NCBI GenBank assembly: GCA_965235115.1
Contig: OZ249445.1
Location: 9,548,001 to 9,612,000 of the forward strand
Length of the DNA stretch: 64,000 nt
Direction of reading: 5' to 3'
DNA from: Laetmonice hystrix
Taxonomy: Eukaryota
Every line of letters begins with the position of its first letter. The first letter of the stretch is position 1. The notes beneath the pieces were generated by a model. That model was not told the DNA's origin, did not search any database, and saw only the letters and a list, made by a program, of their open reading frames with translations. The position numbers and the translations under genes are program-made. Positions 34,876-59,376 of the stretch are shown piece after piece.

Positions 34876-35104
34876 TTATGTGAACATCTCCTGCTCGATG
34901 GGTTTCTTTACCCACTCGCCGCAGCCAGCAAACCGGAATGCCTGACACATCAGGGCCTTGGCCTTCTGGTAGTTCTCGGCCATCTTCTTGGTACTGTAGT
35001 ACGTCTTTTGTACGCACGACTCCTTGCTGTACGTCTTGCAAACCTCTTTGAACTGCTTGTAGAGCGCATTCTTGGAAATCTGGGACACTATATCACTGCC
35101 AGGC
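34876..35104 (-). CDS. ADAR: ADAR terminal exon ([15 protein letters not shown]...YQKAK...[12 protein letters not shown])
   Basis: gcttgttacag acceptor, TAA at 34876-34878; typical ADAR C-terminal SK, Y..AK and W..KP motifs. Confidence 0.95.
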
Positions 35105-41100: not shown

Positions 41101-44100
41101 GTACATTCGACCAAAGTGTATTTAATCCTCACTAGGCTGATTCCTAACAGGTAAAGAATTCCCTTGGATGCCCAGGAACCTACCTGAGGAAACCTCTCCG
41201 AGCAATGACCTCTGCGTGTGAGTCATTCACTGTGGCCCCCTCTTGACTCATCTGAGGGCCTGTGATACACCGGTTACCTGTGAAACACAAGTGTCATCTC
41301 TATACAAGTACTATATCAATATATAAGACAGAACCAGAATCTTACCAAAATAGTTTCATCTACATTACCAGTATTTCATTTTGGCCCTTCTTGATAATGG
41401 CTTGCACATCTACAGTTCTATGCTGACACAGTGGTATAACATCATCCTTTAAAGGTTTATTACCTGTGCCGAGACTGATAACTCTCCCGTCCTCTTCCTC
41501 TGTACATTTCATAATCATGGCAGCAAGCACCTTTCGCCCTGACAGACTGTCAGGTATGGTCACCGCAAGCGTATTGAATGCGCGGTGAGCCAAAGCTGCC
41601 ATCTTGTCAAAGTGTCCCAAATTATCCATTGCTCCGCCATTTGATGATGACTGAAACAGTTGCCAATAAGAAACTTTTTTTCACTAATCTACAAGTATTA
41701 TCTTATCTGGCTGGGGAAGTGGGAAAACCACTGATCTAGCAAGTTCTAGTAACTTACAAACTCAATCATATAATGCAAAAAGGCAATATGAGTTTAGAGT
41801 GGATTCTATGATCCGAGTGCTGACCTGGTTAAGACCCTGTGCTACCTTGTACTGGCCTTCAGCCATCAGGGTGCGCAGCGCCACATCGGCTGCCTCTCGT
41901 CGGCCGTCCTTCTTGTTGGTACACACGACGGACTGGAACCGCCGGCCGCCCAGAGATGCTGCAATCGTGAACCTGTCCAGGAATACATACACACATCAAT
42001 CCCAACAAGGTGATCAGCTGATTTTACATCAAAGATTTTATGCCTCCAAATGTTACAACTGCAATCCCTTTTATTTTTTATCAGTCCTTGAAATACTGCG
42101 ACTGACAGACTAGGACCGAGTAGGTCGTGAACTTGGCGTATGACTTACCTAGGGTTGTGAGGGGGTCCCCGCTGACTGAGGACATCAATGCGTACTTCAA
42201 GACCTTTGCCTTGGCCATACTCATTGAGTGCGCTCACTGGGTTCTTATGGAGGGCAGCAAACTCCTCGGCACTGACGTGAACAGCTTGCTGCTCAGTATT
42301 CTGTTGTGGTGTGTTACCATCATCAGGCTGGTTGAGCTGTAAGACAATACAATAAACATGTTATAATTGGTGGATACATACCAAGTACCCTGGCACACTC
42401 CTTGTCTGTGATAAATAGTCCATGACCATATCAATCGGTACTCTAGGATACCCCCGGTAGGTTAGGCATGTAATATTGCCAACTTTCCAACAGAATACGC
42501 TTTGTTTTGTAAAATCTACCCAACTCTACTTTTCTTTAAGCATTTGTCAGATTAGCTCCACTCCTCACACACTCTACAGTTATAAATACACATCCACCCA
42601 TAACGACGAAGCGCCTCTACCTAGGCTTATAATACAGCTGGCCTTCACCTGAACTTTATCTTGATTTACGACTACATTTCAAACCACCGCTATTCTTAGT
42701 CACCTACCAGTTACCGGTACTAGTACATTCAGTAGCCTGCTAAGGTAGCCATACAAGACCAAGCGTCCCACAAACATGAACGCTTGACAAAAGTTTAGTA
42801 CTTGACATCTTGAAAAGGCAGACAGAAAATGCATGAGAGAAATCTCCTACGGCCGCATTCTAGAAACATTTCAAGGACAGGAAACGAGGATACTTCAAAC
42901 TGAGTATGAAAACAGTGGGTCTAAAGTATGTACTGATTTACAACTAAATCTCGTTTAGGTACTGAAATTGTTAATCATAAAAAAAACTGTGAACTTTAGA
43001 AATTATCAGTCAGGTTACAACACTGTCTTAAAGTATAGCTGGATCGTCAAGAGGCACAGAAGAACAGTGCAACTTAAATTTCAAACGAAATGATAATGTA
43101 CTTTCTTTCGTACAAAAACACCTGGCTATCACAGAAGGACAGCAAGTGATGAATTCTTAACAAATTCTCATGTTATTTTCTGTCATCAGATCTTACCTTA
43201 CACTCTTCCTCAAATATAATCCTTAGCACTTGTTTATAGTAGCAGGCTCCATTTTAGTTTGGATTACAGTAAAGTGCAATTTCTATTTAAAAGAAAACGC
43301 TTTCAACAAGCTTGTTTCAAACTCCAAACCACCCAATCACCTAGTACACCATCCTTATATACAAACACTCAGTCACAATTTCATCCTGATTTTAGAATTC
43401 CGGATGCAAGGCCATGCAGTGTTAAAAAAATGGTTTCAAGATAGGACTTTACACCAAGCCCAAACCATGTGACGCTAGTCTCTATAGTTAGTGTCACATG
43501 ACAAGCTTTTTAATGGGAATCCTTGTAAAACCGATCTCAACATCAACGCAGTATGGCCAATATGGTGTTAGCATACATCAGAAGGTTCGAAAACTACAGG
43601 GTACTTTGCTCATATGACAATGTCTATTGCGTCATGATTTCGCGAGAGGAAAGCCTGAATAAAATAAATCTCAAAGTCTGGACAACACTTGGTTGGTTTT
43701 GCACACTATGATGGAAGAGGTGGGTCAGGGAGTTCAGTCAAAAACCAGTTTTTAAACGATACATGGCCTTGGTCAGTTGGGTCAAGAAACATGAGTGGGT
43801 CACGGCACTAGCACAGGTCTGTCTTACCAAGGGCCTGCCATCGGTCACAGGCGTCCTACAACGAACATTCAATGTCCACAACTTGGTTTCATACTTATGA
43901 CAGGAGACTGAATATTCTAAACCTCAATGCTAACAGCACGTTTTAGTCTGAGCTTGAAACACCTTGTAGGGCACTTCTGACAGTTGAGAAACTTGGACAG
44001 GACAGGCCTATGTTAGTGTAACGGTTCCCTGGGTCTTGTAACTATGTTCTCTTCTCAACGGAATCACGACATGCAATTCAGTTTTCATATCTTGAATGTT

Positions 44101-47100
44101 GCAAGTATGTAAGGATCTTGGCAGTATATATATAAGTATATATATACAGGGGTAAGAACTGAGGTCTGGCCACTTACGTCATCATCGTCAAAGTCGGCCA
44201 CGCCCTGTAGGTAGCATGACAGTTGTATGTTTTACATGTTCCCACCCATCTACGTCCTTCTACTTTCTTATTCTCCATTTTCAACATACTGAATTCCACC
44301 TGCACTAAACGGCTACTATAGTTACCATAAGCAAAGTTAACCAACAGTTCTACTTTGATGAGGGTACCGTGCATACTCAATCAGTAACAACCAACACTAT
44401 AACAATACGCCGTTATTCTGGTTAAGGTATGCCAAAACCTAACTTGCTGCTCAGATCATACCATTAACAATGCCCCAGTATTGGCATAAATACTCATTGC
44501 GGCCCATTTGTTAGAGGAAATATTTCCTGCACACTTACGTTGGCATAGCGCGCCCAGTCAGAACATTCTCCTTCTCCTACTAAGGTTTTCAGGGCTGTCT
44601 CTGCTGCTTGTCGTTTACCTTCCTTCTTGTTGGATGCTTCTACTGGCTCAAACTGTCGGTCACCCACATAAGCAGCTATTGTAAATCTAGAAAAACACAC
44701 AACGGTACAAAGTTCACACAATAACAACTTGAGGATGTCATAGGTTACCTACCAATGTAAGTTTATATTTACATCACCTGTCTGTGTGTGTGTGTTAGTG
44801 TACCGGTATACCAGTAATGCACCCAACCTCGCCGGATCGCGTAATACAATCCGGCAGAGGGCGCCATTTACACGCACCATTGGTTCAACTAACCCCCACC
44901 AGGTAGCGCTTTCAAATCAAGACGGCCCTTTAGCTGCAACACCGTGCATAATTAGCAAAACATTCAATCACGTTTTCTGACACACTTCTGAAATTGAAAC
45001 TAACACACACCCAGGAGGAAAAAGGCAACAACATCTTCATTTCCTAATATGATTCTACCAGGACACTGGAGGCAAAGAATCAGAAAAGCTATAGAACATC
45101 TCTGTCATCACAATCTTTTATTTTGTTTTTATTTTTCCATGCCTAGCAGCCATACTGTACCCGACCATACCGTTTTCCGAGGTTGTCCCCTGTCACCAGT
45201 CGACTCACTCACCTTGGATTGTGTGGTGGCCCACTCTGACTGAGGACATCAAATTTCACAGTCACTCCCTTTGTTTGGCCATACTCGTTTAGGACGCTGA
45301 TTGGATTTTTGCTTTGTGCAGCAACTTCATCTTCCACTGGTAGCGCCACCTGGGGCGCTTCCCCACCATTAGTAGCCTTGTGTCCATCGTTAATACTTAA
45401 CTACAAACACAAAACAACACGTCCACTAAAGTCAATACTCTTCTGATTATGATTTTGAATGATTATTTGAATTCGGACTTGCATATAAGTTCCATATATA
45501 ATAATGTACCCAAGGCCACAAACATTCTGTATTCTGAGTGTGGAGTGTGTAGTGTACTTTGGCAAGTATTTCCCCAAGCTCCAACTCCAAAAGCTACACT
45601 GGAAACAAAACAACCACGGTGCCTGGGACAAGACACCTGGCTTGAACAATAAGATGGACACCATCTCAGAAACAATCGATAAAACAATGGTACCTGGGAT
45701 CAGGTTAAATGACAATCTTCTTATTACTTACTGATTCTACACCCTGAGCGAGCGAGGAGTCTCCACTAGCTAGGCTTCGGAGCGCTGAGACCGCTGCTTC
45801 AGTGCGCCCATCCTTTTTGTTGGTTGCTTCAACCGCCGGGAATTGGTGATTTCCCATGAATGCAGCCATAAGGAACCTGGAAATACAGCGAGCCTCAAGT
45901 CAGGTTGGTAGAAGGTTGTACATGTATATTGTTGGTTCAGCCCTCATTATTATTTACGTAGGTGGGTTACCGGTAGTAGATACTTGGTCCCTGCTGGGTT
46001 GGAATGCAATTATTTAACAAAGACGTTCTCTGCAACAATATATTCTGCCACAAACAGTATGGAAAGTCAGCCTAAAAATTCAAAAGTCTTGAAAGTATTT
46101 GCCAAAACCATAAGACTTAAATCTTCAGATTTGGCCAACATAACATCAATTTCCTGCAAGATAACTACATGACGTCATTTCTCATGATTTCCAAGAGTGT
46201 AATATTGTAATGGGGTAACCTTGGAAACACCAGATAAATCAGTAGAGATCCTCTGACTGAGAGCAACATCATTTACAACGTCAACCACCTGGCCAAATCA
46301 ATGATTGTTTGTGGCAAGCACCCACAACATCATCCAAGGTCCACTTCACTCTAACACCAATACGTTAACTCATTATGTAATATGCCCTGATCAATTAGGT
46401 TTTATAGGCACTGGCAGTGGCAGTCGTTTCTGTAAGTGCATGTCCTGGTACTTGATTCTCAGTCAGGACATATGGTTCTCATTGTGAGCCTGATGAATGA
46501 ACCTAATAAATCAGAATCCCTGGCATGCTTGTCCTACATAACGGTAATCTCAAAACAGACTGGTTCAAATATTACTGTTACTCCAAACCTCACATCCCAG
46601 TCACACGTAACCCACTCATACAGGCCATAACAGGCGTGTCATATTATGTCTCCATCTCAGAGAGGGCAATTTTTACGTATCCCTTGCATCTTCGAGAGAG
46701 CAGCCCTTTCCTGATCAATAATAAACACAGAGAGAAAATCAGCTTGTTGCTTGGATTAACTACCGCAACTCTCACACCTGCCCTCAGAAAATATCAATAT
46801 TTGGATTATCATTTACTACTCAACTGGGTTCAATGTTGGTCAGGGACAATGGGCAGCAAGTGTATTTCCATTAATAGTCTCAAATATCGAGTATATTACA
46901 GCTATTTAAAAAATATTCAAAACTGTACAATAAATTTGCGTGTTAAATCGTTATTTCTCTTCCCAGTGGACATGGAGAAGTCTGGCAATTCCCGACTGTC
47001 TTTTCAATTTAAAAAAAAGGCGATTGCTCATGATATCATACGGTTTCCTGGCTTGTCCTGCTTACCCTTCATTGCCATGGCAACTCAAGTAATCTCAGGC

Positions 47101-50100
47101 ATTCATCCAGGTGGGCATCAGCAGGTGTAATCTAATAAGGCAGCAGCAGGCAGCAAGGTTGATGACGTCAGTAAGATTGAAACCTGTCCATCGGTCAGGG
47201 TCAGCAAGGCGGCTGTTAACCTGCCCAACTACTCCCTTCACCTCCCGTTAAATCACAACTTTAACACGGACCAATATCACACAACACTACCAACGTCTTC
47301 CAGCAGCACACGCCACATCCACTCAAACAATCTGAAACCTGTAAATTGATTCCTTTCACTGTGATATCACAGGTACTTGTAATTCAGATCTATCCAGACG
47401 GCAGATCTATTCCTAGGTGGCCGTCAGCCATTACACTTGGTTGACATGATCGGCAGAGGGAGCGCCAGGTTGCCGGTCTGTGGACGCTCGTCATGTGACC
47501 AAGCCTGCTGGTCCCGACTCTCAGTCAGCGGTAATCCCACCAACCACCGCCACAGTTCCCCTCACTTTCTGTGCCCCCCCACCCATACACACAGTCTGTA
47601 ATTATTTGAAGACTATCACAGTACCATTGTCATATAATGTCCTCCGATCAGATCCTGCAGATCCTTGCTCACACCAAGAGGTATTGGTAAGAGCCCCCAC
47701 CCCCCACCCGCCACCTACAGATGTTTGACAGAGATCTCCCTGTTCAACTGTACCGATGGGAGAACCCTGTCACTTTGCTGCTGCCGGCGCCAGTCGATGG
47801 CCTCCAATGAGCACCACAGAGGCAGTGAGTCAGATTGCTAAAGGATGATGATAACATGGTGCAACATCCAAAGGGGGAACGCCCTCAACAAGCTACTAAA
47901 ACCCTGCCACCGATACCTTCACATTCCCATCCATTCATTTCTTCAAAGGGGCACAAACACTCAGTCTTCAATCAATACATTTTTCTTCCAATCTTCGTTT
48001 TCCAATGCTATAGATGCATAAGAAGCAAACATCTATTTTTACATCCCCCTCCCCCCAAGGCATGCGCCTTACAAAATGTACCCTTTCTTTATGTATGCAT
48101 GTCACTATTAATTAAATCCACCTGCCCTGTTGTCCTTCCCACTATCTCTGCCTCACAATCATTCCTATATTGATAGTACAGTGACACCCCCTCCCCCCTC
48201 CCCGTTTGTTGAGAGAAAGCGAGCGTACCTAGGGTTGTGAGGAGGCCCGCTCTGCTGGATGACTTCGATGCAGACATGTTGGCCACGAGCTTGTCCATAT
48301 TCATACAGAGCACTAACAGGATTCTTTCCCTGCCACGACAAGCCGGCGCTCGACTGGCCCGTGCTGACCACCTTGGTTGCGGTGATCATCTTGCTGGTGT
48401 CAGGAGGTGTTACAGGGCTTGTAGACTGCGCAGGAATTGTCACAGGCTGCCAAAAATATAATCAACTTCATTTACTCAAAACATCATGAGCATATTACAC
48501 TAAACTTAACAATACAACCCAATATTCTCACCTTCACTTAATGTGACGCCCCCTCCCTAAAAATGATCTTTTTCTTGAATGGAAGATGAATCCATCGAGC
48601 AGTTGTAATTGTAAGGAGGCGATTCCACACTACCATGAGGAGTATTCATTGTTATTCTCCCTGTATCTCTGACGTCGTTCGTACCACGACTACTGTGTAA
48701 CTGAACTCTAAGTGGGAGCCACTCACCCCACGTTATGGCCACTATTTGTCATACTATATCACTTTAATCTTGGAGGTTAATTTTTGTCCCGCTCAAGTTG
48801 AATGGTGGGGACTGGGTGGAGACTGCCTACCGTGGGGCTGCAGCTCTTGGACCAGACGTTGGTGTTATTGGCGAGGGCGTGTAGTGCTGCCTCGGCCGCC
48901 TCTCGACGTCCGTCCTTCTTGTTGGACGCGTCCACAACTGGGAACTGTCGACCTCCGATAAATGCTGCCATACAGAATCTGAATAAACAAACAAACACAC
49001 CGCTCAGTATCTAACCCTGACTGGAAACAAAACACCAAACAAAACACACCGCTCAGTATCTAACCCTGACTGGAAACAAAACACCAAACAAAACACACCG
49101 CTCAGTATCTAACCCTGACTGGAAACAAAACACCAAACAAAACACACTGCTCAGTATCTAACCCTGACTGGAAACAAAACACCAAACAAAACACACCGCT
49201 CAGTATCTAACCCTGACTGGAAACAAAACACCAAACAAAACACACTGCTCAGTATCTAACCCTGACTGGAAACAGTCATAATAAAACACCACCCCATCAT
49301 TCTGACAGTTCATCCTATTAAAGCAGGTTGAAGAAAATGTCTCAACCTTGTGACCACAGTCTTTCTGAACGCATATTTGCAGAGAGTACCCTCCCCCAAA
49401 TCAATAACTCGCCTACCCACCCCATATAACTCCCCCTGAGGTTGTTCTGACTTTATTTCTACCCCTAGGTTATCCTCCCGTTAAATATGGAAAGGTCTAC
49501 GATTCTTTGTATGAAATCAATCAATGACACCCTTTAAATTAAAAATATATATATGCCAGTTCCATTTCTATTATAAATTATTAAGACCTGAGCATTCATA
49601 AACAAAAATTACTTATCCGCCTGTATATCGATGACTAGTCCGAGGGCGGCTGACCTCCCTTATTTCTGCCACACTATATTATACCAAACGAAATCTGTCT
49701 TCATCTATTCGATGCTGGCCACCCATTTCCACATCAGCTCTCTAGATAGACACACATAAACCTACCACAATAGGCTTCAGTAACCATAGCAACATATGTG
49801 GCCATGAGTCAGTGCACAGTTTTCTGCATATAGTATGAGGCGAACCTCTGTCTAAGAGACTGCAGGTTGGGTGAGGGGTCATGTCCTGTTCAGTTAGGAC
49901 CCTGTACAGTGTAAAATGACGACTACTGCTTCCCATTCACTCAATGGTAGAGCCACTATCGGTACCGTACTCATGGGCCTAATACCATCAAGATGGCCGC
50001 CATCAAGACTTTGTCCTCACCGGATGCTGTCTGTCGGCTACCTCAGCATCATCTTTAACGATAACATCAATAATGCACGATCGTCTTCTCACTGTAAATG

Positions 50101-53100
50101 GGCATCCGGCCCCTCCCCTCCCTCCCCTCCCGCCCACTCACCATACCGACCAACTGCTGGCATTATCAGACAGCATTTCTAGGCTGATGGCCCAGATATC
50201 ACAGCCACCTCAATACAATCTGTCTTCACCGATACCAACAGATCTCTAAATACTCTCACACTAATAACAAATTAAATGATAAACTCTTGATCGATCTACT
50301 TATGCACATCCCCTGACAAATAAAATCAATCTTTTAGCAGGGCACACACGCTATGCCTTCAAACTAATTATCAAACACTGGCCAGTTTAAAGTAAAAGAG
50401 ACAAAAATCTAAATTACTTAATTACTCTATAGTGAGAACTGCACACGCAAGTGCTTTCTTCAAAACAAGTATTGAACTAGCCACAAATTCAATAGGTTGA
50501 CCTACAACAACTGATATTATTGTGGATGTATTCCACAGTCCATCCTCTCTAAAGGCAGTCTTAATTGTGCAGTACAAATGTCTTAATCAGTTACAATCTG
50601 AGTCCATGAATGCAAACGAGAGACTATCGATAGTGATTCTGAACAAGATAAACTTATGGCTGTATGTTAAACACCACCATATTCTGACAAATCTGTCGAT
50701 ATTATAGAGCAGGCAATAATCTGACTGTTATTCAACAGTAACGTTTTACTGCCGCATGACATCCGGCATGCCATGATACACACACCTGGCCTCCACCTGA
50801 CGGCATGATGGCACGTTACGGTTACAATACTTGAATCTTTCAAATCTTATCACTAGTCACTACCTACTCATTCCATGGCTGTCATCCCAAAGAAAAGCAA
50901 AGACCTCTATCAATGAGTGTTGATAACATTACTTCTCCGCCCTCTACAAACCAGAAATACTGTCAATCTGACAGGTCACAGTTTGCATGTTCAAATAACA
51001 TGACACTGACGGTCCCAAACGGAAAGGTATGGGCATACCCGGTACTTCTCTTTGAACTTATTGGGTTCACGCCCAACACCTCAGGCAGAACCGTGCCTAC
51101 CGTGAGTGTGGTGCACTAACCACGACAGCCTGCCGGCTAACTGGTCTTCAGAACACGCATTCCTAGAAATTTCTAAAACATTATACTGTCCCCAAATGTG
51201 TTCCTTTGGTTACTATGATCCGCTGTATGTGCCGGGGTGCGTTCATGTGTGTCGGGATGCGGGTAAAAAACCTTTACAGCTGTGTGTCACACACGCACAC
51301 ACACCTTGTGTCACACACCTTAATGTGTCACACACCTTGTGTCCCTGTCCGGAGGGGGTTATACAATATGAATCGCGTGGCATTGACCTAACTACCTCAC
51401 GTTTGTGTCAGTCCACTGCAAGCTCCCTGAGAATAGAGCATGACCTGAGACTGAGTTATCAACGTCCCCACGTCTCTCCCAAACAACCGGAACTTCAATC
51501 CATCAACTGTTCACATTCAGTACTCTTCCAGACTTGTTACTGCTCGCGGTAGCCTGGAGTGTATTACCCACTATGTGTGTTCACCTGCCCACAGTGAGAT
51601 CGTGCCAGTACAAGCGGGCCCACGGACACGGTCACTGCCAGTATCATAACGCTACCGGACATACAGGTGTTAATTGACCAGCTGGACAGATGGTATTCTG
51701 AGATGGCGTGGGACGTACCCCCCCCCCCCTCCCCCACCTCCATTACGTCACTGCTGCTGACGTAGGGCCGCCACCACTCTGAATGATTTAGCGTACGGGT
51801 TCATCAATGATGAACGCCATATTATCATCATTAATGACACAACTTTGTCCTTATCAATACTCTTCATATCAATTAGTACGGCTCATTACAGCTGTTATCA
51901 TTTACGAAATCAAAATTAAAAAGGACCTGACCAAAAGATAAACTTTAGCGACAACGTGAAATAAATAAGCATATGATGTTCCACTGATTTACTTTGTAAA
52001 TTGTACAGACACTGTAGAATGTTCGGTCAGTTTCGGTGGGTTCTCCAAATTACAGGTTCCATACAGAGGAGCGGGCTCCACACATCCACGCGTCATGACC
52101 ACTGGAGCCGTCCGCTCCACTCTCCTATCTGAGCGTAGATCAAGCCACTCAGGGTGCCGGTCGGCACGGCAGTCAGGCTCAGACATCGCGGCCTGCGACA
52201 GGAGCCCAGGTCCTTGGGAGGTAGGTAGCTGTGAATGATGTGATCCAGACCATCATCACCTCAACTGTGGACGGCTAGTACCGCCAGCCAGGCGGCCGGC
52301 CACCGGGCCTCCTGCCCTGTCTGTACAATACCACTTCATGACCCTGCTTGATGGACGACCTGCCGGACAGCCACCTTACCGACCTGCCGGACGGCCACCT
52401 TACCGACCTGCCGGACGGCCACCTTACCGACCTGCCGGACGGCCACCTTACCGACCTGCCGCACGGCCAGCCATGACGCTATACACCTTCGGGATGGCTC
52501 CTCCTCTACCATCAACCCTTTACCAAATACTAGCGAGTGTTTTCATTACTGGTTAGATCAGGGTAAGATTTAGAGTTATTGTGCCAGTCAGGTTACTGGG
52601 ATAAGTCCCGGCTCATGGTACTCAATGACTCACTCAATGGGGCGGCATTCGGACAAAAGGCCTTCAATTTAACCTAGATAGGAAGATTTCGTGCTGAATG
52701 TTCCCAGATCATAGTCAGTTCCCGATGCACTTCTGACATCCTTAGTCATAACAAATGGAGCAGTCTTATTTACCAGGTCGCTGTCATTGTCAAACAGCCG
52801 TCAACAACACCAAAGTTCCTGTCATTTCTCCTTGTGCTATTATTTCTCAGAGACAATCAGAATTTAAAGTAGAAATATTTTTCATCATTGATTTCTTGGC
52901 GGTGTTCATTTCTGGCTTACAGTGTTACACATGTGGAGAACTGGGCCAACAAAACCTCAGGATCCCTGTCGGGTGTTAGGGTTATGGCTGCACTCCCGGC
53001 CTGCATAATGTCAACCCACCAGGCAGGCAGTCAGTCGGAGACTGGGTGGGGGCCACCTTGACAGTCTGAACTGACCAACGTGGCTTCAGTTTGACAACCC

Positions 53101-56100
53101 AGACCTCATACTGCAGGCTGAGCCAACACAATTACTTACACGTCTCTGTACAACAGAGAGCGACCGCTTCGACCCTCTGACCTCCAACCTCGGGCTGACT
53201 AAGGTCATTAGGCTTGATCCTCGGCCAACATGAAGGTTAGAAACTCTTGAACCAAAATCATCATAAATAACAGTTAAACGGAATTCTTTACTTCGGAGAT
53301 TCATAGGGTAATCCTCAAGGGTCAATGGCAAATCTGAATGGTAAAAGAAAATTAAGAGCCAGCATCTTTTTATAGCTATCCTTGAGCAATGACTGCAAAA
53401 ACAACGTACACATTATGACACGAGTTTTTAAAAACCCCGTCAAAGGGCAATAAACTGAGAGAGTCTCTCTTGCTAAGCTTCAACCATGTGCAAAACGTGT
53501 GTAAACAGAGAAATAACTGTCTTTTTTCAGCTTTTGTGGAAACATGCCATGTTGTGGCGAAAAAACTATTTTGCACTGCGATTTCATCAACATTTTGGCA
53601 ACGAAGTACAAATGAAGTACAACAAACCGAACCTTTTGTGATTACAATCAGCACGTATGAAGGTAAAAAAATCACTTCTTAACGAATATCATACACGGAT
53701 ACACGGTTAGTTTCAAAGCCCGCAAATACCGCTCATATTCACAAGCCAAAATAATGAAATATTACGGAAATTTCGTTAAAATCGAGGACCAGTATGATCC
53801 CTACAGAAAACATTCTACAAAGGGAAGAAAAATGTAAAGGTTCCTTTCGTTACACCAGAAAATCTTTACATTGACCGACTCAATGCTGTGAGATGAACAG
53901 CCGGACACGACGCCTACCAGTAATGGTTTCCAAGCCTGACAGGTTGATATATGACCACCTGCATGTCCATCTGCCCAGCGTGGGCGGTATCATCGATAGG
54001 CTCGCTTCGGGTCAGCCCCAGAGTCCGGGATTATCCTGAACCATAGCTGTGCAATTATCCTTCTTTAATCCTATTCTCGACCGCTTTAATCACCTAGGCT
54101 TTTGGTCAATGACAGTAGGGACGGTCACGTGCCACCAGCCCCTGTTCCCTATGGTCGAGCGGGGGGGGGGGGGGGGATTTTCGACTACCATCGTGGTAAC
54201 TACATGTATTAAATACGAAAGAGACACATCACGTCAATGGGTCCTGATGAGCCAGATACGATGCTAGACTTGACTCAAGGTAAGTAAGTAAACCCACCAC
54301 CGCAGTCAATTCATTCCGAGCCTGTCACTGTCAGCACCAGGTCTACAGCAGCTGTAGAACTCACTTAGAACAAAATGAAACAATCATTATTATGGCCATT
54401 TAGTACTTGATGTAGCTAATGGCTAGAGAACATGTTTTGGGTGTTGACTCGTCCTCTTCAATAAATTCTAGTTCTAAACGTTGCGCATTGATGCAATGTG
54501 TCTTGCTTCTGGGCATCTGTACGCAGGGGGAAATATCACTTCCCGAAAAAAAACTTTGCAAGGTTGGCGATCAACGATAAGCTTTGTACAGTGTAGCCCA
54601 GTCAATGGCGCCACTAGGCTGGGAGCCAGTCAGCCAATACCCCACCACCTGGCCCCGCCAGATTACAAACACCACCCTCACTGCGGCACGTCGACCAACA
54701 AACCTGGCCAACAAACCTCAGCCTCTACCGACCGCCACCTGGGGGCGCATCACTCGCACATCCGGGATACACCTGATGATCCCACTTGCCCGTTCATTCA
54801 TCCCAGCATGTACAGCACACGCTCAAAAGAGCAAATTTCTTTGTTCTCTTTCGTAAACCTTTCGTATTTACGGCTAAAATCTCTTCCTCTTCTCAATATG
54901 GTAAGAATTTAGCAGTACAAATTAACTTAGTACTTGTGATACATAATGGACCTAAAATTGACTTTAGTATATTACATTTACAGCAAAAACCCACCGAATT
55001 GTTTTATCTTCTTACTGTATTCTTCCCGTAAAAATGGTTCTCTTAAAAACAGAATGTCCCCCCTGCTGGCTATGTGTACACGGCGGGGCCCGCAGTGTGA
55101 CCATGTGTCATCAACTCTTACATCCACAAAACATCACTTCTTCTCATGGTTACCTTCATGTACCTCACCCCACACCCTCCCGTCTCCTGCCAGCTCGTTC
55201 AACCGCACACGACGATAACAAAAACTCATCGTTTCTTGTAATATTCGCTAAAGGTTACATCAGCGTGTGTCGGTAGTAGGAATACAACTTGGACACGGCA
55301 AGCCAGCCAGATTGTACCGACTTCATATCCACCATAATATCGGCTACTCGCTTCGACAAGCCACTTTTCGGATAATCAGCAGTGGCAAACTAATCTGCTG
55401 GCACTGCCTGGAAGGTATGCACTATCTAACTCCGGTCTGGGGAATAGCACTCAGAAATAAGGCAAGTACAACCTTATAATGTATATAATCCCCTGAGATT
55501 GTCGGTTCCCGGTAAACAGGCCTTGGTAAGGATTCCACGATGGATGGAATGTACAAGTGAAGTAATAACATAATACATATCCCCTGGTTTACCTTTCTGT
55601 GCAGCCCAATCACACAAATACTCCTACCTTATCCATCTTCAACAATTATCTTCAGTGAAACAAAGTGAAGGATATTTTGTCCTGACAACATTCATTAAAT
55701 CGAGAGATTTCTTCTGAAAACGTTTGAAACATTACGTGCCATCCACCGAATGTAACGATATAGGATGCTAACGCTCAATCATAACTTCGTCAATCCATCA
55801 TACAAAATGCCAGATCATCAATAAAACACTAATTGTGCCAACCATTCTTGTACCTCCCTCCCTGTACCTAATTTCAGCCAGCCCTCTAATGACTTGTAAC
55901 TACCACAGTCTCCTGGCCTGAAGAACAGCAGACATTACCAGACTGCACAAATGTTTCCGAGTTGGGATGACACAGCTGTGAAATCGTTCGGCGGCCGCCA
56001 CCGCCAGACTGTCCCACAGTTTGTCCTTGTCGAGGTAAACCCCGCTGGTTGGACTCACCTGAGTCTGTCCACCAAACCACTAACTGACCACCAGACACAC

Positions 56101-59100
56101 ACCGCCTCGGGACCCACCAACCGACTGCTCCGGACACCCGCCGAGACTCGACTGATCGGACACCCGATTGACCACTGACTACAACCTCGACTGGACCCCC
56201 TCCGACACTTCCTTCTTTCTCACATAACAGATGGCCAAGGGTGACCACATCTGCTGCACGCACATAGACCTGGTCATGACTCGGAGATCACAGACCTTGC
56301 TGTTCCCGGCACACACCTAGCATGGCATGTCTTAAGTCTAACTGTCCGACCGGGGGATTAAGACATTAAAACGGAATTCCAATCCCATAAGTATGCGTTA
56401 ATGAATCACAAATTAATTTTTCTTTTCACATGAAATCATCAACTCGCTAACACTGAACACTCAACTGGACCTCAATTCTTGTCATGCACGCTGAAGTTCT
56501 GTTCATGAGTTAATTGGACATCAAAATCTCAAACCCAAGACTTTGCGATACCCTAAAAATTAACTCTGGATTATCAATACTAAACTGGAGGCCGCATTAT
56601 ACTCTTCTTTTTAATATGTAAACTTTCGGAAATTTTATTCCCTAACTTTTTTTCTACATGGCCCAAATGTTACGTTAAAAAAGAATACTCTTGACTTTTG
56701 TACTTGATATGGCTGAAGAGTCGGGCAGGAGTACAATACAAGGTTTAAATCACAGACTCTCTTGCTGTCAGACCCAAGCTGTGCATGAGCCCTTGGTTAC
56801 CTGGTCACCAGTGCAGCAGATGCTGCACCATTGGCTGGAATTCATCCCCACTTCTCCCGGCCCCCGCCCCATCACTATATAGGCCAAAGTTCAGGGGCCA
56901 GCGGTCAAGGTTAGCCCGTGTCAGCTTTTCAGTATGTTTCTGGGTCGAAGTTCAGCGGTAACTACCTATGGTATAAGAGGCTTGTACACCAGTTCCAAGG
57001 GTTGGGAGTGTGAGGGGCGACTGCGGCGGGTAACCAGCTGAGGGCCCTGATAAATACAACGTATCATAGCAACGCGCCCTGATATCCTATCTGGGCATGT
57101 GTATCAGACAGGGAGAGAGCACTCCAACCCCACTTGGCGCAATGACAATCTCTCAGGGCCCTCCCACCCCCTCCAGAGTGCAAGTACAAACTTCTCTAGA
57201 TCTCTTGCCCACGACCTTCAGGTGACCTGGGAGCCCTTTCTAGTTCATGTTGAGTCCAAAAAACGATTAGTTGAGGCCTTCCAAAACATGGGCAAAACTA
57301 GGTTTTATTGGTAAGAAGCTATCAATTTGTCCGGCCTGAGATGGGTTTAGCTGGGTATATTGGGTGGGATAGGGGTGGGTCACATTTCATCAGTGTACAA
57401 CGTCTTCTCATGACAGGAGACATGAGGGTTAGCCCGCCCACACCTCACCCCAATCTCCACCCTAACCCGACATGTCCCTACACTAGGGGTCATCATGATT
57501 AGGTCCACCTCCTGGTGGGGGACAGCCTCACCTACGTCACATAGCGCCGCCACGTGGTTCACCTCAGGTCATCACAAACATTTCCTCATCTCCACCACGC
57601 CTACCGTCATCCACTCTCAGCAATTCCAGGTTTCCTGGTTCAAATACAAGCTGCTTGTATTGGGTTCCTCATGATCGGCTCTTCAATGAAAAGTGGCCGC
57701 CTTCTTAGGTAAAGTACTCCTAAGCAGTCCATGATCTAAGAACCATATGCCGGTCCATCCTACCGTGCACAACTCGATGACTTCCCTTCATAACTCAGAC
57801 CTCAGGTAAGGGACCCATCACACCAGCTGGTAGAAACTTGGCGAAAAAAACGTCTACAAAAACCAGGTTGGCCATAAGGGCACGGCCGTCGGCAGGTTGT
57901 GGGAAATACCATCCTGACTGACTGACCTGACGGTACTCAGTAGTTGGGAGTATTACCATATGGTATTACTCAGAATTACTCTACCTGTCGATTGAACCTC
58001 GCATCCTAACAATTACATTAAGTACCGGTTTTTGTATATTTTCACTATTTCTGATCTTTACTGATAATTGGTTTGCATCTCTCAATTCCTGTTCAATCTC
58101 TACAGTGGCCAGCAATATGGTTTGATAAAGTCTGGAACATGTTTGAGAGCTTACCACGGTGTAGCGGCTGGTAGTTTAAATACGACCAGGCTACACGCCT
58201 CCTTTGGTATCTTTGACCATTTAAACGTGTCTGATGTAGCCTTGAATTCGAGTTTTGGCTTGAGCTTTGAGATTATCACGAGGGGTAAGGAACATAAAAG
58301 GCCATAATCAATGTAAAAAGACTATAATTGATTTTCATGTTCGAAATTAGATTTTTGTATAGAGAGCTCTTCCTTATGCTTTCCGTAACTGCAATTTGCG
58401 TCAGAAATGTCTATATTATAGCTTGTATACTGATTCTCCTGTAGAATCCTCATTTCAATATGAACGGAATAATATTACCCTAATCTAAACTTCATGGCGT
58501 CATTTTAAAGCAGCACATTGGAGAAATGACCCTGTAGACCTTATGACAAACAGCCATGAAATTTGCAGCTTTCAGTCTGGAAATTGCTGACAGTAGTACA
58601 GGGCACCCTGCGACAATACTGCAGCAACACCAATGAGGGGAGAAATTCACACTGGATCAGATCACCTCCGTGCAACAGCGGCAGCCGCTGATTCTATTCT
58701 GTTGCTATGGCAATGCAGGTGTCTCCTCCACTGTCTTCTTCATCAGCAGCACTATCTCGATCCAGCTGCTAGCATGAGAAAATATCCCATAAATTTCCTA
58801 CTGTCTACAGCACTGTGCCAAAACAGCCAAGTGCCAACCCTACCTACCTGAGAATGCCTAGGTATTAGCAATATTTTACTGGCGTTCAAATACTTCTTAA
58901 AATACGGATTCATTGAGCACTTTAAATAAACAATATTAATTACCTTGCTTACTTCACCGTACATCACGATGACTCATTTTTGTTGCACACTGCTGTTTTA
59001 TGTATGCAAACCAGGAGACTCAATACATCAATCAATGTTTCCTGTCATACAAGACGATGACTTAGCATCCCATGTTTCTGAGACTCCTGAGTTTAAAATT

Positions 59101-59376
59101 AGAGAATCCCCTAGTTTTCTGGAAATATTCCGGGCCTGAACTCAGGAAATCTTGGCTGCCACTGGTGCAGCCCGAGTTTCAGAATAATTGTAAACCTTGA
59201 GAAGTAAATATTTTGATGGTTATGTTGGAGATTCATGACGTACCTTGGATTATGTGGGGGACCACTCTGGCTGACGACTTCAATTCGGACTTCCATGCCA
59301 CGTTTCTGTCCGTATTCATTGAGTGCACTGACTGGGTTCTTATCACCATTCATGATGGCTGCCAAGGGCGCAGAAC
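34876..59376 (-). CDS. ADAR: Double-stranded RNA-specific adenosine deaminase, ADAR1 type (5'-partial, 15 exons, 4 dsRBDs + deaminase domain)
   Basis: Hand-spliced exons, all GT-AG with consistent phases: 59244-59376, 48831-48978, 48229-48446, 45732-45876, 45213-45400, 44539-44686, 42149-42336, 41825-41972, 41464-41650, 41184-41277, 40887-41048, 40574-40677, 40141-40323, 39716-39956, 34876-35104 (2516 nt plus 1 nt from an upstream exon). Catalytic motifs DSHAE, APCGD, MSCSDK and EAGEGT are present. ADAR1-like signatures: [34 protein letters not shown]. Confidence 0.95.
35938..35951 (-). promoter_or_regulatory. CTCF-like motif in the last ADAR intron
   Basis: Minus strand CCACTAGGTGGCAG matches the consensus; sequence match only. 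Confidence 0.4.
39716..39956 (-). CDS. ADAR: ADAR exon ([16 protein letters not shown]...VNHPRLGRV...SINWVLND...)
   Basis: gtgtttggcag acceptor, GGCAG|gtaagt donor, phase 1 to 2. Confidence 0.95.
40141..40323 (-). CDS. ADAR: ADAR exon (GEGTIP...[39 protein letters not shown])
   Basis: cactctccag acceptor, CTTG|gtaaga donor; base-flipping Glu and the SCSDK zinc ligand. Confidence 0.95.
40574..40677 (-). CDS. ADAR: ADAR exon ([35 protein letters not shown])
   Basis: gtgatatag acceptor, GCTG|gtgagt donor; LRTK motif of the 5' binding loop. Confidence 0.92.
40887..41048 (-). CDS. ADAR: ADAR exon (FLYQNLQ...[18 protein letters not shown])
   Basis: tctttcacag acceptor, CCAAG|gtagga donor; zinc-ligand Cys in PCGD. 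Confidence 0.95.
41184..41277 (-). CDS. ADAR: ADAR exon with catalytic HAE motif ([32 protein letters not shown])
   Basis: gtttcacag acceptor, CTCAG|gtaggt donor; zinc-ligand His and catalytic Glu. Confidence 0.95.
41464..41650 (-). CDS. ADAR: ADAR exon: start of deaminase domain ([16 protein letters not shown]...[11 protein letters not shown]...ISLGTG)
   Basis: actgtttcag acceptor, ACAG|gtaata donor; aligns with the ADAR1 deaminase N-terminus as I recall it. Confidence 0.92.
41825..41972 (-). CDS. ADAR: ADAR exon: dsRBD4 C-half ([35 protein letters not shown]...)
   Basis: cctggacag acceptor, CAG|gtcagc donor, phase 2 to 0. Confidence 0.9.
42149..42336 (-). CDS. ADAR: ADAR exon: linker + dsRBD4 N-half (…[35 protein letters not shown])
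   Basis: tgtcttacag acceptor, CCTAG|gtaagt donor, phase 0 to 2. Confidence 0.9.
44539..44686 (-). CDS. ADAR: ADAR exon: dsRBD3 C-half ([35 protein letters not shown]...)
   Basis: gtttttctag acceptor, AAC|gtaagt donor, phase 2 to 0. Confidence 0.9.
45213..45400 (-). CDS. ADAR: ADAR exon: linker + dsRBD3 N-half (…[35 protein letters not shown])
   Basis: tgtgtttgtag acceptor, CCAAG|gtgagt donor, phase 0 to 2. Confidence 0.9.
45732..45876 (-). CDS. ADAR: ADAR exon: dsRBD2 C-half ([35 protein letters not shown]...)
   Basis: gtatttccag acceptor, TCA|gtaagt donor, phase 2 to 0. Not in the ORF track; read manually. Confidence 0.9.
48229..48446 (-). CDS. ADAR: ADAR exon: linker + dsRBD2 N-half (…[35 protein letters not shown])
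   Basis: tttttggcag acceptor, CCTAG|gtacgc donor, phase 0 to 2. Confidence 0.9.
48831..48978 (-). CDS. ADAR: ADAR exon: dsRBD1 C-half ([35 protein letters not shown]...)
   Basis: tttattcag acceptor, ACG|gtaggc donor (best phase-0 candidate), KKxGR motif. Confidence 0.88.
48990..49274. repeat. 49-bp minisatellite, 6 copies, abutting an ADAR splice acceptor
   Basis: GCTCAGTATC recurs at 49002, 49051, 49100, 49149, 49198 and 49247. Confidence 0.95.
52357..52469. repeat. 24-bp minisatellite, about 4.7 copies, in the 10-kb ADAR intron
   Basis: Unit GACCTGCCGGACGGCCACCTTACC. Confidence 0.9.
59244..59376 (-). CDS. ADAR: ADAR exon: dsRBD1 N-half ([45 protein letters not shown])
   Basis: ccccttacag acceptor, CCAAG|gtacgt donor, phase 1 to 2; dsRBD alpha1 motif [10 protein letters not shown]. 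Confidence 0.9.

What the first reader, a model, noticed from the sequence alone, without database searches (positions are those of the whole stretch)
41825..59376. ADAR1 orthologue with four intact dsRNA-binding domains built by tandem duplication of a two-exon module
Seen in sequence: four dsRBDs, each beginning KNP(V/I)S(A/V)L(N/Y)EYGQ, interrupted at the same phase-2 intron in SGPPHNPR|F and ending NKK(D/E)G(R/K)..AA..AL. Exon sizes repeat (N-halves 188/188; C-halves 148/145/148/148), and all four keep the KKxx(K/R) RNA-contact motif. Established knowledge: vertebrate ADAR1 has three dsRBDs and ADAR2 has two; squid ADAR2 gains an optional third domain linked to resistance to high salt. Inference: this is a lineage-specific expansion of the RNA-binding arm of ADAR1, which could raise affinity or change substrate range. 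I cannot tell whether this lineage's ADAR1 has already been described.
Basis: partly seen in the sequence, partly recalled or inferred. Interest (0 to 1): 0.75.

Follow-up and report, generated by a model that had tools for sequence, protein, structure and literature searches.

The report
Worm ADAR1 gene with four dsRNA-binding domains
This marine worm's only ADAR1-type RNA-editing gene carries four intact double-stranded-RNA-binding domains where other worms, molluscs and brachiopods have one and vertebrates have three, an old expansion of its own whose use in transcripts could not be tested.

Summary
On the minus strand, eight exons (59376-41825) encode four complete dsRBDs. Each is split by a phase-2 intron at GPPHNPR|F. 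Exon sizes are 133/148, 218/145, 188/148 and 188/148 nt, all GT-AG, and they join in frame to seven deaminase exons (837 aa).

N1 has a phase-1 acceptor, and 14.7 kb upstream, outside the window, an exon with an ATG, a weak Z-alpha-like domain and a phase-1 GTAAGT donor fits it. That gives about 1091 aa.

The deaminase sits among protostome ADAR1s, nearest Owenia at 59%, and this is the genome's only ADAR1-type locus. Owenia, Capitella and earthworms have one dsRBD, a chiton has two and vertebrates have three.

The worm's four form one clade (support 94/91) as (d4,(d3,(d1,d2))). A common origin with the vertebrate extra domains is rejected (AU p = 0.018). The copies are old: synonymous sites are saturated (pS 0.65-0.84) while pN is 0.21-0.28.

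The same intron position occurs in Owenia, Capitella, a chiton, a shark and a scallop paralogue, so the two-exon module predates these expansions.

No RNA data exist, so joint inclusion of all four modules is inferred. A divergent scallop ADAR-like RefSeq protein also has four dsRBDs. Verdict: real, a new variant of a known kind, of moderate interest.

The parts
59244..59376 (-). Exon N1: N-half of dsRBD1 (133 nt). It has a phase-1 acceptor, so a coding exon must lie upstream. An in-frame ATG sits at 59353-59355.
   Evidence: Pfam dsrm positions 1-30, 25.9 bits
48831..48978 (-). Exon C1: C-half of dsRBD1 (148 nt), reached across a 10.3-kb phase-2 intron
   Evidence: Pfam dsrm 35-66, 17.5 bits
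48229..48446 (-). Exon N2: 40-aa S/T/P-rich linker plus N-half of dsRBD2 (218 nt)
45732..45876 (-). Exon C2: C-half of dsRBD2 (145 nt)
   Evidence: one synonymous SNP at 45849
45213..45400 (-). Exon N3: linker plus N-half of dsRBD3 (188 nt)
44539..44686 (-). Exon C3: C-half of dsRBD3 (148 nt)
   Evidence: Pfam dsrm 32-66, 26.5 bits; synonymous SNP at 44587
42149..42336 (-). Exon N4: linker plus N-half of dsRBD4 (188 nt)
41825..41972 (-). Exon C4: C-half of dsRBD4 (148 nt). This domain is the counterpart of the single dsRBD of other invertebrate ADAR1s. An alternative in-frame donor lies at 41846.
   Evidence: the C-terminal NKKDG(R/K)[13 protein letters not shown] stretch nearly equals Owenia's; Owenia's C-half exon has a similar length
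41464..41650 (-). Deaminase exon E9 (187 nt)
41184..41277 (-). Deaminase exon E10 with the catalytic HAE motif (94 nt)
40887..41048 (-). Deaminase exon E11 with [15 protein letters not shown], the ADAR1-type zinc-ligand Cys motif (162 nt)
40574..40677 (-). Deaminase exon E12 (104 nt)
40141..40323 (-). Deaminase exon E13 with SCSDK (183 nt)
   Evidence: Pfam A_deamin 97 bits
39716..39956 (-). Deaminase exon E14 (241 nt)
34876..35104 (-). Last exon E15, including the stop codon (229 nt)
48988..49274 (.). 49-nt x 5.9 minisatellite (98% matches) that abuts the C1 acceptor. Each unit repeats a pyrimidine tract plus CAG.

Best explanation
This is the worm's single canonical ADAR1 gene, an adenosine deaminase acting on dsRNA. 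It lies on the minus strand and has at least 16 coding exons spread over about 40 kb. The predicted product is about 1091 aa. It has a basic N-terminus, one Z-alpha/Z-beta-like winged helix (encoded outside the window), four tandem RNA-binding-competent dsRBDs joined by 39-50-aa linkers, and an intact deaminase domain.

The RNA-binding arm grew from one ancestral dsRBD by repeated tandem duplication of the ancestral two-exon unit: a linker plus N-half exon, a phase-2 intron, then a C-half exon. The most likely order is d4, then d3, then d1/d2. All four copies have been kept under purifying selection for a long time.

Shown: the exon structure, the continuity of the reading frame, the domain identity, the orthology, the clade, the selection, and the one-dsRBD state in other annelids.

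Inferred: all eight exons are joined in the main mRNA, and four dsRBDs raise avidity for dsRNA and lengthen the duplex footprint. That could shift the enzyme towards long or imperfect duplexes or towards binding at high salt. The analogy is the optional extra dsRBD of squid ADAR2 (Palavicini 2009 and 2012, as cited in PMC10278661).
For: Four N-halves and four C-halves alternate on one strand, with no other copy in 99 kb. All borders are canonical GT-AG, and sequential joining gives an open 837-aa frame through the deaminase.

Pfam dsrm matches every half at complementary profile positions, and A_deamin scores 97 bits on one exon. A local profile scores each spliced domain at E about 1e-32. All four keep the helix-1 E, the GPPH loop and KKxx(K/R).

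The upstream exon L004:5099-5858(-) has an ATG and a wHTH that matches Pfam-verified Z-alpha segments of P0077 and P0028 at tblastn E 6e-8. Direct Pfam z-alpha gives 13.7 bits, and the PDB entry 1xmk, an ADAR1 chain (its Z-beta domain by my recollection), matches at E 0.07. Its ATG|GTAAGT donor is in phase 1, matching N1's acceptor.

The deaminase lies in the protostome canonical ADAR1 group. Only this locus matches Owenia ADAR1 at 61-80% per exon; the other A_deamin loci match at 33-46%.

In the dsRBD tree the four worm domains form one clade at 94/91, and the vertebrate domains stand apart in groupings of their own; a shared origin of the extra domains gives AU p = 0.018.

The copies are 56-69% identical as protein and 57-72% as DNA. 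pS is 0.65-0.84 and pN is 0.21-0.28, and both exonic SNPs are synonymous.

One dsRBD is found in Owenia, earthworms, Capitella (10 kb upstream searched) and an ENA invertebrate contig. The same intron position is seen in Owenia, Capitella, chiton, shark and the scallop paralogue. Logan DNA contigs are collinear with the assembly across modules 1-3.
Against: No RNA run of this organism was found, so no splice junction is confirmed, and exon skipping or N-half/C-half mixing cannot be excluded.

The Z-alpha match is below Pfam's cut-off. Its link to N1 rests on strand, order and phase alone, and further exons could lie in the 14.7-kb gap.

No close relative of the worm was available, so the age and spread of the four-domain state are unknown. 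A tree in which d4 groups with the other annelids' domain and excludes d1-d3 is only marginally disfavoured (AU p = 0.063). The dsRBD alignment has 72 columns, so the clade support is not decisive. RNA binding and editing were not measured.
Confidence: 0.75

Rival explanations
1. The modules are used as alternative or combinatorial cassettes. Modules 2, 3 and 4 are each a whole number of codons (363, 336, 336 nt), and every intra-domain intron has the same phase. Transcripts could therefore carry 1-4 dsRBDs, including chimeric N(i)+C(j) domains, and the four-domain protein might be a minor form.
For: The frame arithmetic comes from the exon sizes and phases. Earlier notes on this genome report arrays of duplicated alternative exons in other genes. 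No RNA data exclude it.
Against: Each N exon carries its own, unrelated 28-40-aa linker, as constitutive tandem domains do and unlike equal-length mutually exclusive exons. N1 has a different acceptor phase from N2-N4, so whole modules cannot be mutually exclusive with module 1. Vertebrate ADAR1 has the same two-exon-per-domain layout in a protein that carries all three domains, and the shark gene shows that layout. All sites are strong canonical sites.
Confidence: 0.15
2. The multi-dsRBD state is ancient in annelids or lophotrochozoans and was reduced to one domain in Owenia, Capitella, clitellates and molluscs. The clade of four would then reflect homogenisation by gene conversion.
For: Paralogue divergence (56-69%) is as deep as the divergence of d4 from the Owenia or Lingula domain. 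AU p = 0.063 does not reject d4 grouping with the other annelids. A 34-nt patch of C1 and C4 differs at only 3 bases.
Against: This needs at least four or five independent losses, against one lineage of gains. The best tree has the four as one clade at 94/91. Saturated synonymous sites speak against recent conversion. Grice and Degnan (PMC4323055) infer one ZB plus one dsRB as the ancestral ADAR1 form.
Confidence: 0.08
3. Some of the copies are dead exons, relics of duplication that are not part of the protein.
For: There is only the absence of RNA data.
Against: All eight exons are open, keep canonical splice sites and compatible phases, and keep every RNA-contact motif. pN is a third of a saturated pS, and both SNPs are synonymous.
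Confidence: 0.02

Closest known systems
Vertebrate ADAR1 (p150/p110): two Z domains, three dsRBDs, deaminase
   Same: [quoted passage not shown] The intron sits at the same place, GP.H.P(R/K)|F, as shown here for all three shark domains and, from my memory, reported for human by Wang et al. 1995. The linkers are about 40 aa.
   Different: It has four dsRBDs, not three, and one Z-like domain, not two. The extra domains arose independently: the worm domains form their own clade, and a shared origin is rejected at AU p = 0.018. The worm's four are 56-69% identical to each other, clearly more alike than the three vertebrate domains in the alignment.
Canonical protostome ADAR1 (Owenia, Capitella, Perionyx and other earthworms, Lingula, molluscs; squid sqADAR1)
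   Same: These are the orthologous genes: the deaminase is 56-64% identical, and dsRBD4 nearly equals the Owenia domain at its C-terminal helix. The intron position within the dsRBD is the same in Owenia and Capitella.
   Different: They have one dsRBD, or two in the chiton Liolophura (PMC7762157; PMC4323055; PMC10278661 speaks of 'the lone dsRBM'). Owenia instead multiplied Z-alpha, with four Pfam stretches.
Argopecten irradians 'double-stranded RNA-specific adenosine deaminase-like' (XP_069138165-9; P0147, P0264)
   Same: It has four Pfam dsrm domains plus A_deamin, its dsRBDs form their own clade, and the one intron junction I could read here (in its fourth domain) lies at the equivalent position.
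   Different: It is a divergent paralogue outside the canonical ADAR1 group on a long branch. It is 45% identical over the one deaminase exon used as query, and no Z-alpha was detected. Its four domains are near-identical recent copies and have partly lost the GPxH/KKxxK motifs. It is known only as an automatic gene model.
Squid ADAR2 with an optional third dsRBD
   Same: An extra dsRBD has been added to an invertebrate ADAR. It is reported to raise activity and salt resistance (Palavicini 2009 and 2012, cited in PMC10278661).
   Different: It is a different paralogue (ADAR2). One extra domain is encoded by one alternatively spliced exon, with experimental support that the worm gene lacks.
PKR of fishes and amphibians with one to three dsRBDs
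   Same: [quoted passage not shown]
   Different: The effector domain is a kinase, not a deaminase, and the clade is vertebrate.

Membership tests
ADAR1 (double-stranded RNA-specific adenosine deaminase) | C-terminal A_deamin domain with the zinc and catalytic residues (HAE, PCG Cys, SCSDK Cys) | tested here: met
   Pfam A_deamin scores 97 bits on exon E13 alone. SHAE, TAPCGD and SCSDK are all present in the spliced product. Seven exons match ADAR1 homologues end to end.
ADAR1 (double-stranded RNA-specific adenosine deaminase) | The deaminase groups with ADAR1, not with ADAR2, ADAD or ADAT | tested here: met
   The tree of the C-terminal 430 aa places it in the protostome canonical ADAR1 group, nearest Owenia at 59%. 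The genome's other A_deamin loci match Owenia ADAR1 at only 33-46%. The ADAR1-type [11 protein letters not shown] motif is present.
ADAR1 (double-stranded RNA-specific adenosine deaminase) | At least one dsRBD (Pfam dsrm) N-terminal of the deaminase | tested here: met
   There are four. The halves match complementary parts of the dsrm profile, and the spliced domains score E about 1e-32 with a local profile.
ADAR1 (double-stranded RNA-specific adenosine deaminase) | At least one N-terminal Z-alpha-type domain in the same protein | tested here: inconclusive
   A candidate exon lies 14.7 kb upstream and outside the window. Pfam z-alpha gives 13.7 bits (E 0.066), below the cut-off of 21. tblastn against Pfam-verified Z-alpha segments gives E 6e-8, and the PDB ADAR1 chain 1xmk (Z-beta by my recollection) matches at E 0.07. 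The donor phase fits N1. No transcript links the exons.
ADAR1 (double-stranded RNA-specific adenosine deaminase) | Conserved intron inside each dsRBD, after GP.H.P(R/K) | tested here: met
   The intron is phase 2 in the worm (x4) and in Owenia, and lies at the same residue in Capitella, chiton and shark, where I did not read the phase.
ADAR1 (double-stranded RNA-specific adenosine deaminase) | A-to-I editing activity on dsRNA | not testable with these tools
   This needs recombinant protein or matched RNA and DNA reads. No RNA run is available.
Type-A (RNA-binding-competent) dsRBD | Three RNA-contact regions: the helix-1 Glu, the GPxH loop, and the KKxxK motif at the start of helix 2 | tested here: met
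   All four domains have ..L(N/Y)EYGQ.., GPPH and KK(D/E)G(R/K). Their role in binding follows from established knowledge of dsRBD structures and was not measured here.
Expressed four-dsRBD isoform | All eight dsRBD exons joined in one mRNA | not testable with these tools
   The look-up of sequencing runs lists no RNA run. The three holders are genomic DNA contigs of one sample.

The most novel reading that the evidence does not exclude
All four dsRBDs are interrupted at the same codon position and phase, and modules 2-4 are in-frame cassettes. The gene may therefore work as a splicing-tunable RNA-binding arm. By skipping modules or joining N(i) to C(j), the worm could make ADAR1 forms with one to four dsRBDs, some of them chimeric, with different affinity or substrate range. 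A Z-less form could also start at the ATG inside N1, analogous to vertebrate p110.
Probability: 0.12. Interest if true: 0.6.

Novelty: new variant of a known kind. Interest (0 to 1): 0.4.

Why it matters
The number of dsRBDs is thought to set ADAR affinity and substrate choice. The published survey that I read reports one dsRBD for non-deuterostome eumetazoan ADAR1 and at most three anywhere (PMC4323055). It also leaves open how much architectures vary within phyla.

Here a canonical protostome ADAR1 has built a multi-domain arm on its own, one domain longer than the vertebrate arm. It used the same two-exon module and kept all copies under selection. An annelid relative, Owenia, multiplied Z-alpha instead.

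This gives a natural, independent replicate for asking what extra dsRBDs do, for example in avidity, length of duplex covered, salt tolerance or protection of self dsRNA. It also gives a set of closely related domains for 1- to 4-domain constructs. The architecture is a variation in number, not a new mechanism, and its effect is untested.

Tried and rejected
RNA evidence. The look-up of sequencing runs (kind rna) returned only three runs of one sample. They hold the introns too, so they are DNA. Read laying showed genomic contigs collinear with the assembly and no splice joints. Its two 'goes back' joints are cross-matches of N4 to N3 and of C4 to C1.

Close relatives. Three word-indexed protein searches found no worm-like multi-dsRBD protein: earthworm ADAR1 deaminase, amphioxus dsRBD alone, and a profile seeded with the worm's exons. 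The first alignment I built for this (A1) misplaced the N-halves, so I replaced it with A2, which is still imperfect. The blank result is therefore weak. A metagenome scan with the four N-halves gave six loci, all distant (44-64%) and all with a single dsRBD. The representative search gave no hit above 64% identity.

Mutually exclusive use of whole modules. Rejected for module 1 against the others because the acceptor phases differ.

Assembly artefact. Rejected, because the copies are only 57-72% identical in DNA and independent contigs span them.

Extra or decayed modules in the 10-kb intron or upstream. None found.

Orthology to the scallop four-dsRBD protein. Rejected by the deaminase tree.

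Not done. I did not predict structures of the spliced domains or run Pfam on the spliced product, because spliced sequences have no reference and I did not type them in. Look-ups for the gar ADAR1 and for scallop isoform X2 found no record, so I used the shark gene and scallop isoform X1 instead.


Full report
**What is there.** The feature lies on the minus strand. Motif scans of all six frames find four N-terminal dsRBD halves (KNP[VI]S.L.EYGQ ... GPPHNPR) at about 59.3, 48.3, 45.3 and 42.2 kb. They find four C-terminal halves (F..AA ... NKK[DE]G[KR]..AA..AL) at about 48.9, 45.8, 44.6 and 41.9 kb. The halves alternate strictly.

I read the borders off the sequence:

| Exon | Window coordinates | Length (nt) |
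|---|---|---|
| N1 | 59376-59244 | 133 |
| C1 | 48978-48831 | 148 |
| N2 | 48446-48229 | 218 |
| C2 | 45876-45732 | 145 |
| N3 | 45400-45213 | 188 |
| C3 | 44686-44539 | 148 |
| N4 | 42336-42149 | 188 |
| C4 | 41972-41825 | 148 |

Every acceptor is a pyrimidine tract plus AG, and every donor is GT. Every N-half ends CC(A/T)AG|GT, so the Arg codon of GPPHNPR is split after its second base. A permissive tblastn of the four domains against 99 kb (the window plus 35 kb fetched upstream) finds nothing else: the eight exons score E <= 2e-14 and the next best match is E > 0.1.

**Domain identity.** Pfam dsrm matches each N-half to profile positions 1-30 and each C-half to positions 32/35-66. The two halves of each domain add up to 30-47 bits against a cut-off of 23. 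I spliced the exons in a script and scored them with a dsRBD profile built from the homologues fetched here. The four domains score E 9e-34 to 9e-32 and cover the whole profile. All four keep the three RNA-contact regions known from dsRBD structures: the helix-1 Glu in EYGQ, the GPPH loop and KK(D/E)G(R/K). That these residues bind RNA is established knowledge and was not measured here.

**The rest of the gene.** Downstream, seven further exons (41650-34876) join in frame with canonical sites. They encode a complete deaminase with [19 protein letters not shown] and SCSDK.

N1's acceptor is in phase 1, so translation cannot normally begin there from upstream sequence in the window. I fetched the upstream genome (the window is G000:C11:9548001-9612000). 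There is an exon 14.7 kb upstream, at L004:5099-5858, on the minus strand. It has these features:
- an ATG and a basic N-terminus;
- a winged-helix segment that matches the Pfam-verified Z-alpha domains of two ADAR1 homologues at tblastn E 6e-8 to 7e-7;
- a direct Pfam z-alpha score of only 13.7 bits (cut-off 21), and a PDB match to the ADAR1 chain 1xmk (Z-beta by my recollection) at E 0.07;
- an ATG|GTAAGT donor in phase 1, exactly what N1 needs.

The most likely product is therefore about 1091 aa: one Z-like domain, four dsRBDs and the deaminase. Whether more exons lie in the 14.7-kb gap is unknown.

**Orthology.** An exhaustive HMMER search with one deaminase exon returns ADAR1 proteins. 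The best are lophotrochozoan (chiton, bivalves, Lingula, abalone) at 57-64%. In a tree of the deaminase domain the worm sits in the protostome canonical ADAR1 group, nearest the annelid Owenia at 59%.

The genome has five A_deamin loci. Only this one matches Owenia ADAR1 at 61-80% per exon; the others match at 33-46%. So this is the worm's one ADAR1. Earlier notes of this scan call the animal a marine worm, and the annelid affinity of the gene fits that.

**How unusual four domains are.** I counted dsRBDs with the local profile in 172 ADAR1-like proteins of at least 700 aa fetched here. Seventy-seven have one, nine have two, 84 (vertebrates) have three, and two have four: the worm and a scallop protein.

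Among annelids:
- Owenia has four Z-alpha stretches and one dsRBD.
- Earthworms have one Z-alpha and one dsRBD (PMC7762157 reports one dsRBD for Perionyx).
- The Capitella gene model is truncated, so I searched its locus. It has one Z-alpha exon and one dsRBD, and no other half in the 10 kb upstream.
- The contig that holds the best hit to the worm's exon, an unnamed invertebrate in an ENA assembly, also has one dsRBD.

Grice and Degnan (PMC4323055) report one ZB plus one dsRB for all non-deuterostome eumetazoans they studied except Nematostella (two ZB), and at most three dsRB (vertebrates and the sponge Oscarella).

The scallop protein (Argopecten irradians XP_069138165-9) has four Pfam dsrm domains. 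It is a divergent paralogue on a long branch outside canonical ADAR1. Its domains are near-identical recent copies.

**Origin of the four.** In a maximum-likelihood tree of 53 dsRBDs the worm's four form one clade (ultrafast bootstrap 94, SH-aLRT 91) with the shape (d4,(d3,(d1,d2))). The clade sits among the single domains of invertebrate ADAR1s. The vertebrate domains stand apart from it in groupings of their own.

Forcing the worm's d1-d3 together with the vertebrate N-terminal domains costs 30 log-likelihood units (AU p = 0.018). Forcing d4 together with the other annelids' domain, which would place the duplications before the annelid radiation, costs 17.6 units (p = 0.063). That is not formally rejected. 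With 72 columns the tree has limited power.

Domain d4 is the closest to the Owenia and Lingula domains, and its last helix ([19 protein letters not shown]) differs from Owenia's at one residue. It is therefore the ancestral copy.

The intron that splits each worm domain is at the same residue in six other places:
- the single domain of Owenia (AA|gtaagt ... ag|G, phase 2);
- the single domain of Capitella;
- the ENA contig;
- both chiton domains;
- all three domains of a shark ADAR1;
- the scallop paralogue, in the one domain whose junction I could read.

The two-exon module is therefore older than any of these expansions.

**Age and selection.** The copies are 56-69% identical in protein and 57-72% in DNA. 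By the Nei-Gojobori method, synonymous differences are saturated (pS 0.65-0.84, against a random expectation of about 0.75), while non-synonymous differences are 0.21-0.28. The duplications are old, and all four copies have been under purifying selection since. The two exonic differences between the assembly and independent contigs of public DNA runs are both synonymous. This argues strongly that all eight exons are coding. It also suggests that related worms share the architecture, but none was available to test.

**What could not be shown.** No RNA run of the organism exists in the index. The three runs that hold the stretch are genomic DNA of one sample. They confirm collinearity of the assembly across modules 1-3 and nothing about splicing.

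Inclusion of all modules in one mRNA therefore rests on four things: canonical sites, frame continuity, each N exon carrying its own linker, and the precedent of vertebrate ADAR1. The arithmetic leaves room for isoforms. Modules 2-4 are whole numbers of codons, and all intra-domain introns share one phase. C4 also has a second in-frame donor 21 nt upstream, although the longer form matches the Owenia exon.

**Mechanism.** The best-supported reading is an active A-to-I editing enzyme whose RNA-binding arm has four tandem, binding-competent dsRBDs. From established knowledge of dsRBD proteins, added domains raise avidity and lengthen the duplex covered. For squid ADAR2, an optional extra dsRBD is reported to raise activity and salt tolerance (Palavicini 2009 and 2012, cited in PMC10278661). 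PKR of fishes and amphibians shows the same kind of lineage-specific variation in the number of two-exon dsRBDs (PMC2291453). Which of these effects applies in the worm is inference.

**Verdict.** The gene starts outside the window and has a Z-like domain. The duplications are ancient rather than recent. A four-dsRBD ADAR-like protein exists in a scallop, but as a different paralogue. The feature is a new domain-number variant of a well-known family, and no new mechanism is implied. Interest is moderate.

Noticed in passing
window 48988-49274: A 49-nt x 5.9 minisatellite (98% matches) ends 10 nt upstream of the C1 acceptor. Each unit repeats a pyrimidine tract plus CAG, so five to six decoy acceptors sit at 49-nt spacing in front of the real one. 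Using one of them would shift the frame.
   Followed up: partly
window 41846 (minus strand): C4 has a second in-frame donor (AAG|GTAGCA) 21 nt upstream of the chosen one. It would remove 7 aa (VAQGLNQ) from the linker to the deaminase. The longer form matches the Owenia exon length.
   Followed up: partly
window 59353-59355 (minus strand): An in-frame ATG lies four codons before dsRBD1, inside N1. A transcript starting in the preceding intron could give a Z-less 830-aa form, reminiscent of vertebrate p110 versus p150. This is untested.
   Followed up: no
L006 (Owenia fusiformis ADAR1, P0161): Owenia ADAR1 has four Pfam z-alpha stretches and one dsRBD, while this worm has one Z-like domain and four dsRBDs. 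Two annelid lineages multiplied different nucleic-acid-binding modules of the same gene.
   Followed up: partly
L008 (Argopecten irradians, P0147/P0264): A scallop ADAR-like paralogue has four near-identical dsRBDs and a divergent deaminase. The one junction read lies at the same intron position, and the domains have partly lost the GPxH/KKxxK motifs.
   Followed up: partly
window 23092-24399 (minus strand): An intronless 435-aa ORF with a full Pfam Phosphodiest domain (ENPP-type, 264 bits) lies about 10 kb downstream of the ADAR1 stop.
   Followed up: partly
window 14476-15009 (minus strand): An open frame has a C-type lectin domain (Pfam Lectin_C, E 5e-8).
   Followed up: no
G000:C21:15875298-15878425 and G000:C5:28042778-28045851: Two similar A_deamin loci with large exons, 44-46% identical to Owenia ADAR1, look like a duplicated ADAR2- or ADAD-type pair. 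Further A_deamin loci lie on C7 and C18.
   Followed up: no
window 52356-52469: A 24-nt x 4.8 tandem repeat lies inside the 10.3-kb intron that splits dsRBD1. That intron is far longer than the equivalent introns of domains 2-4 (2.35 kb, 0.53 kb and 0.18 kb).
   Followed up: no
window 47584-47631: Contigs of public DNA runs skip 46 bases here (intron between N2 and C2), an indel polymorphism. There are also about 25 SNPs in 6 kb, so the sample is heterozygous or differs from the assembly.
   Followed up: no
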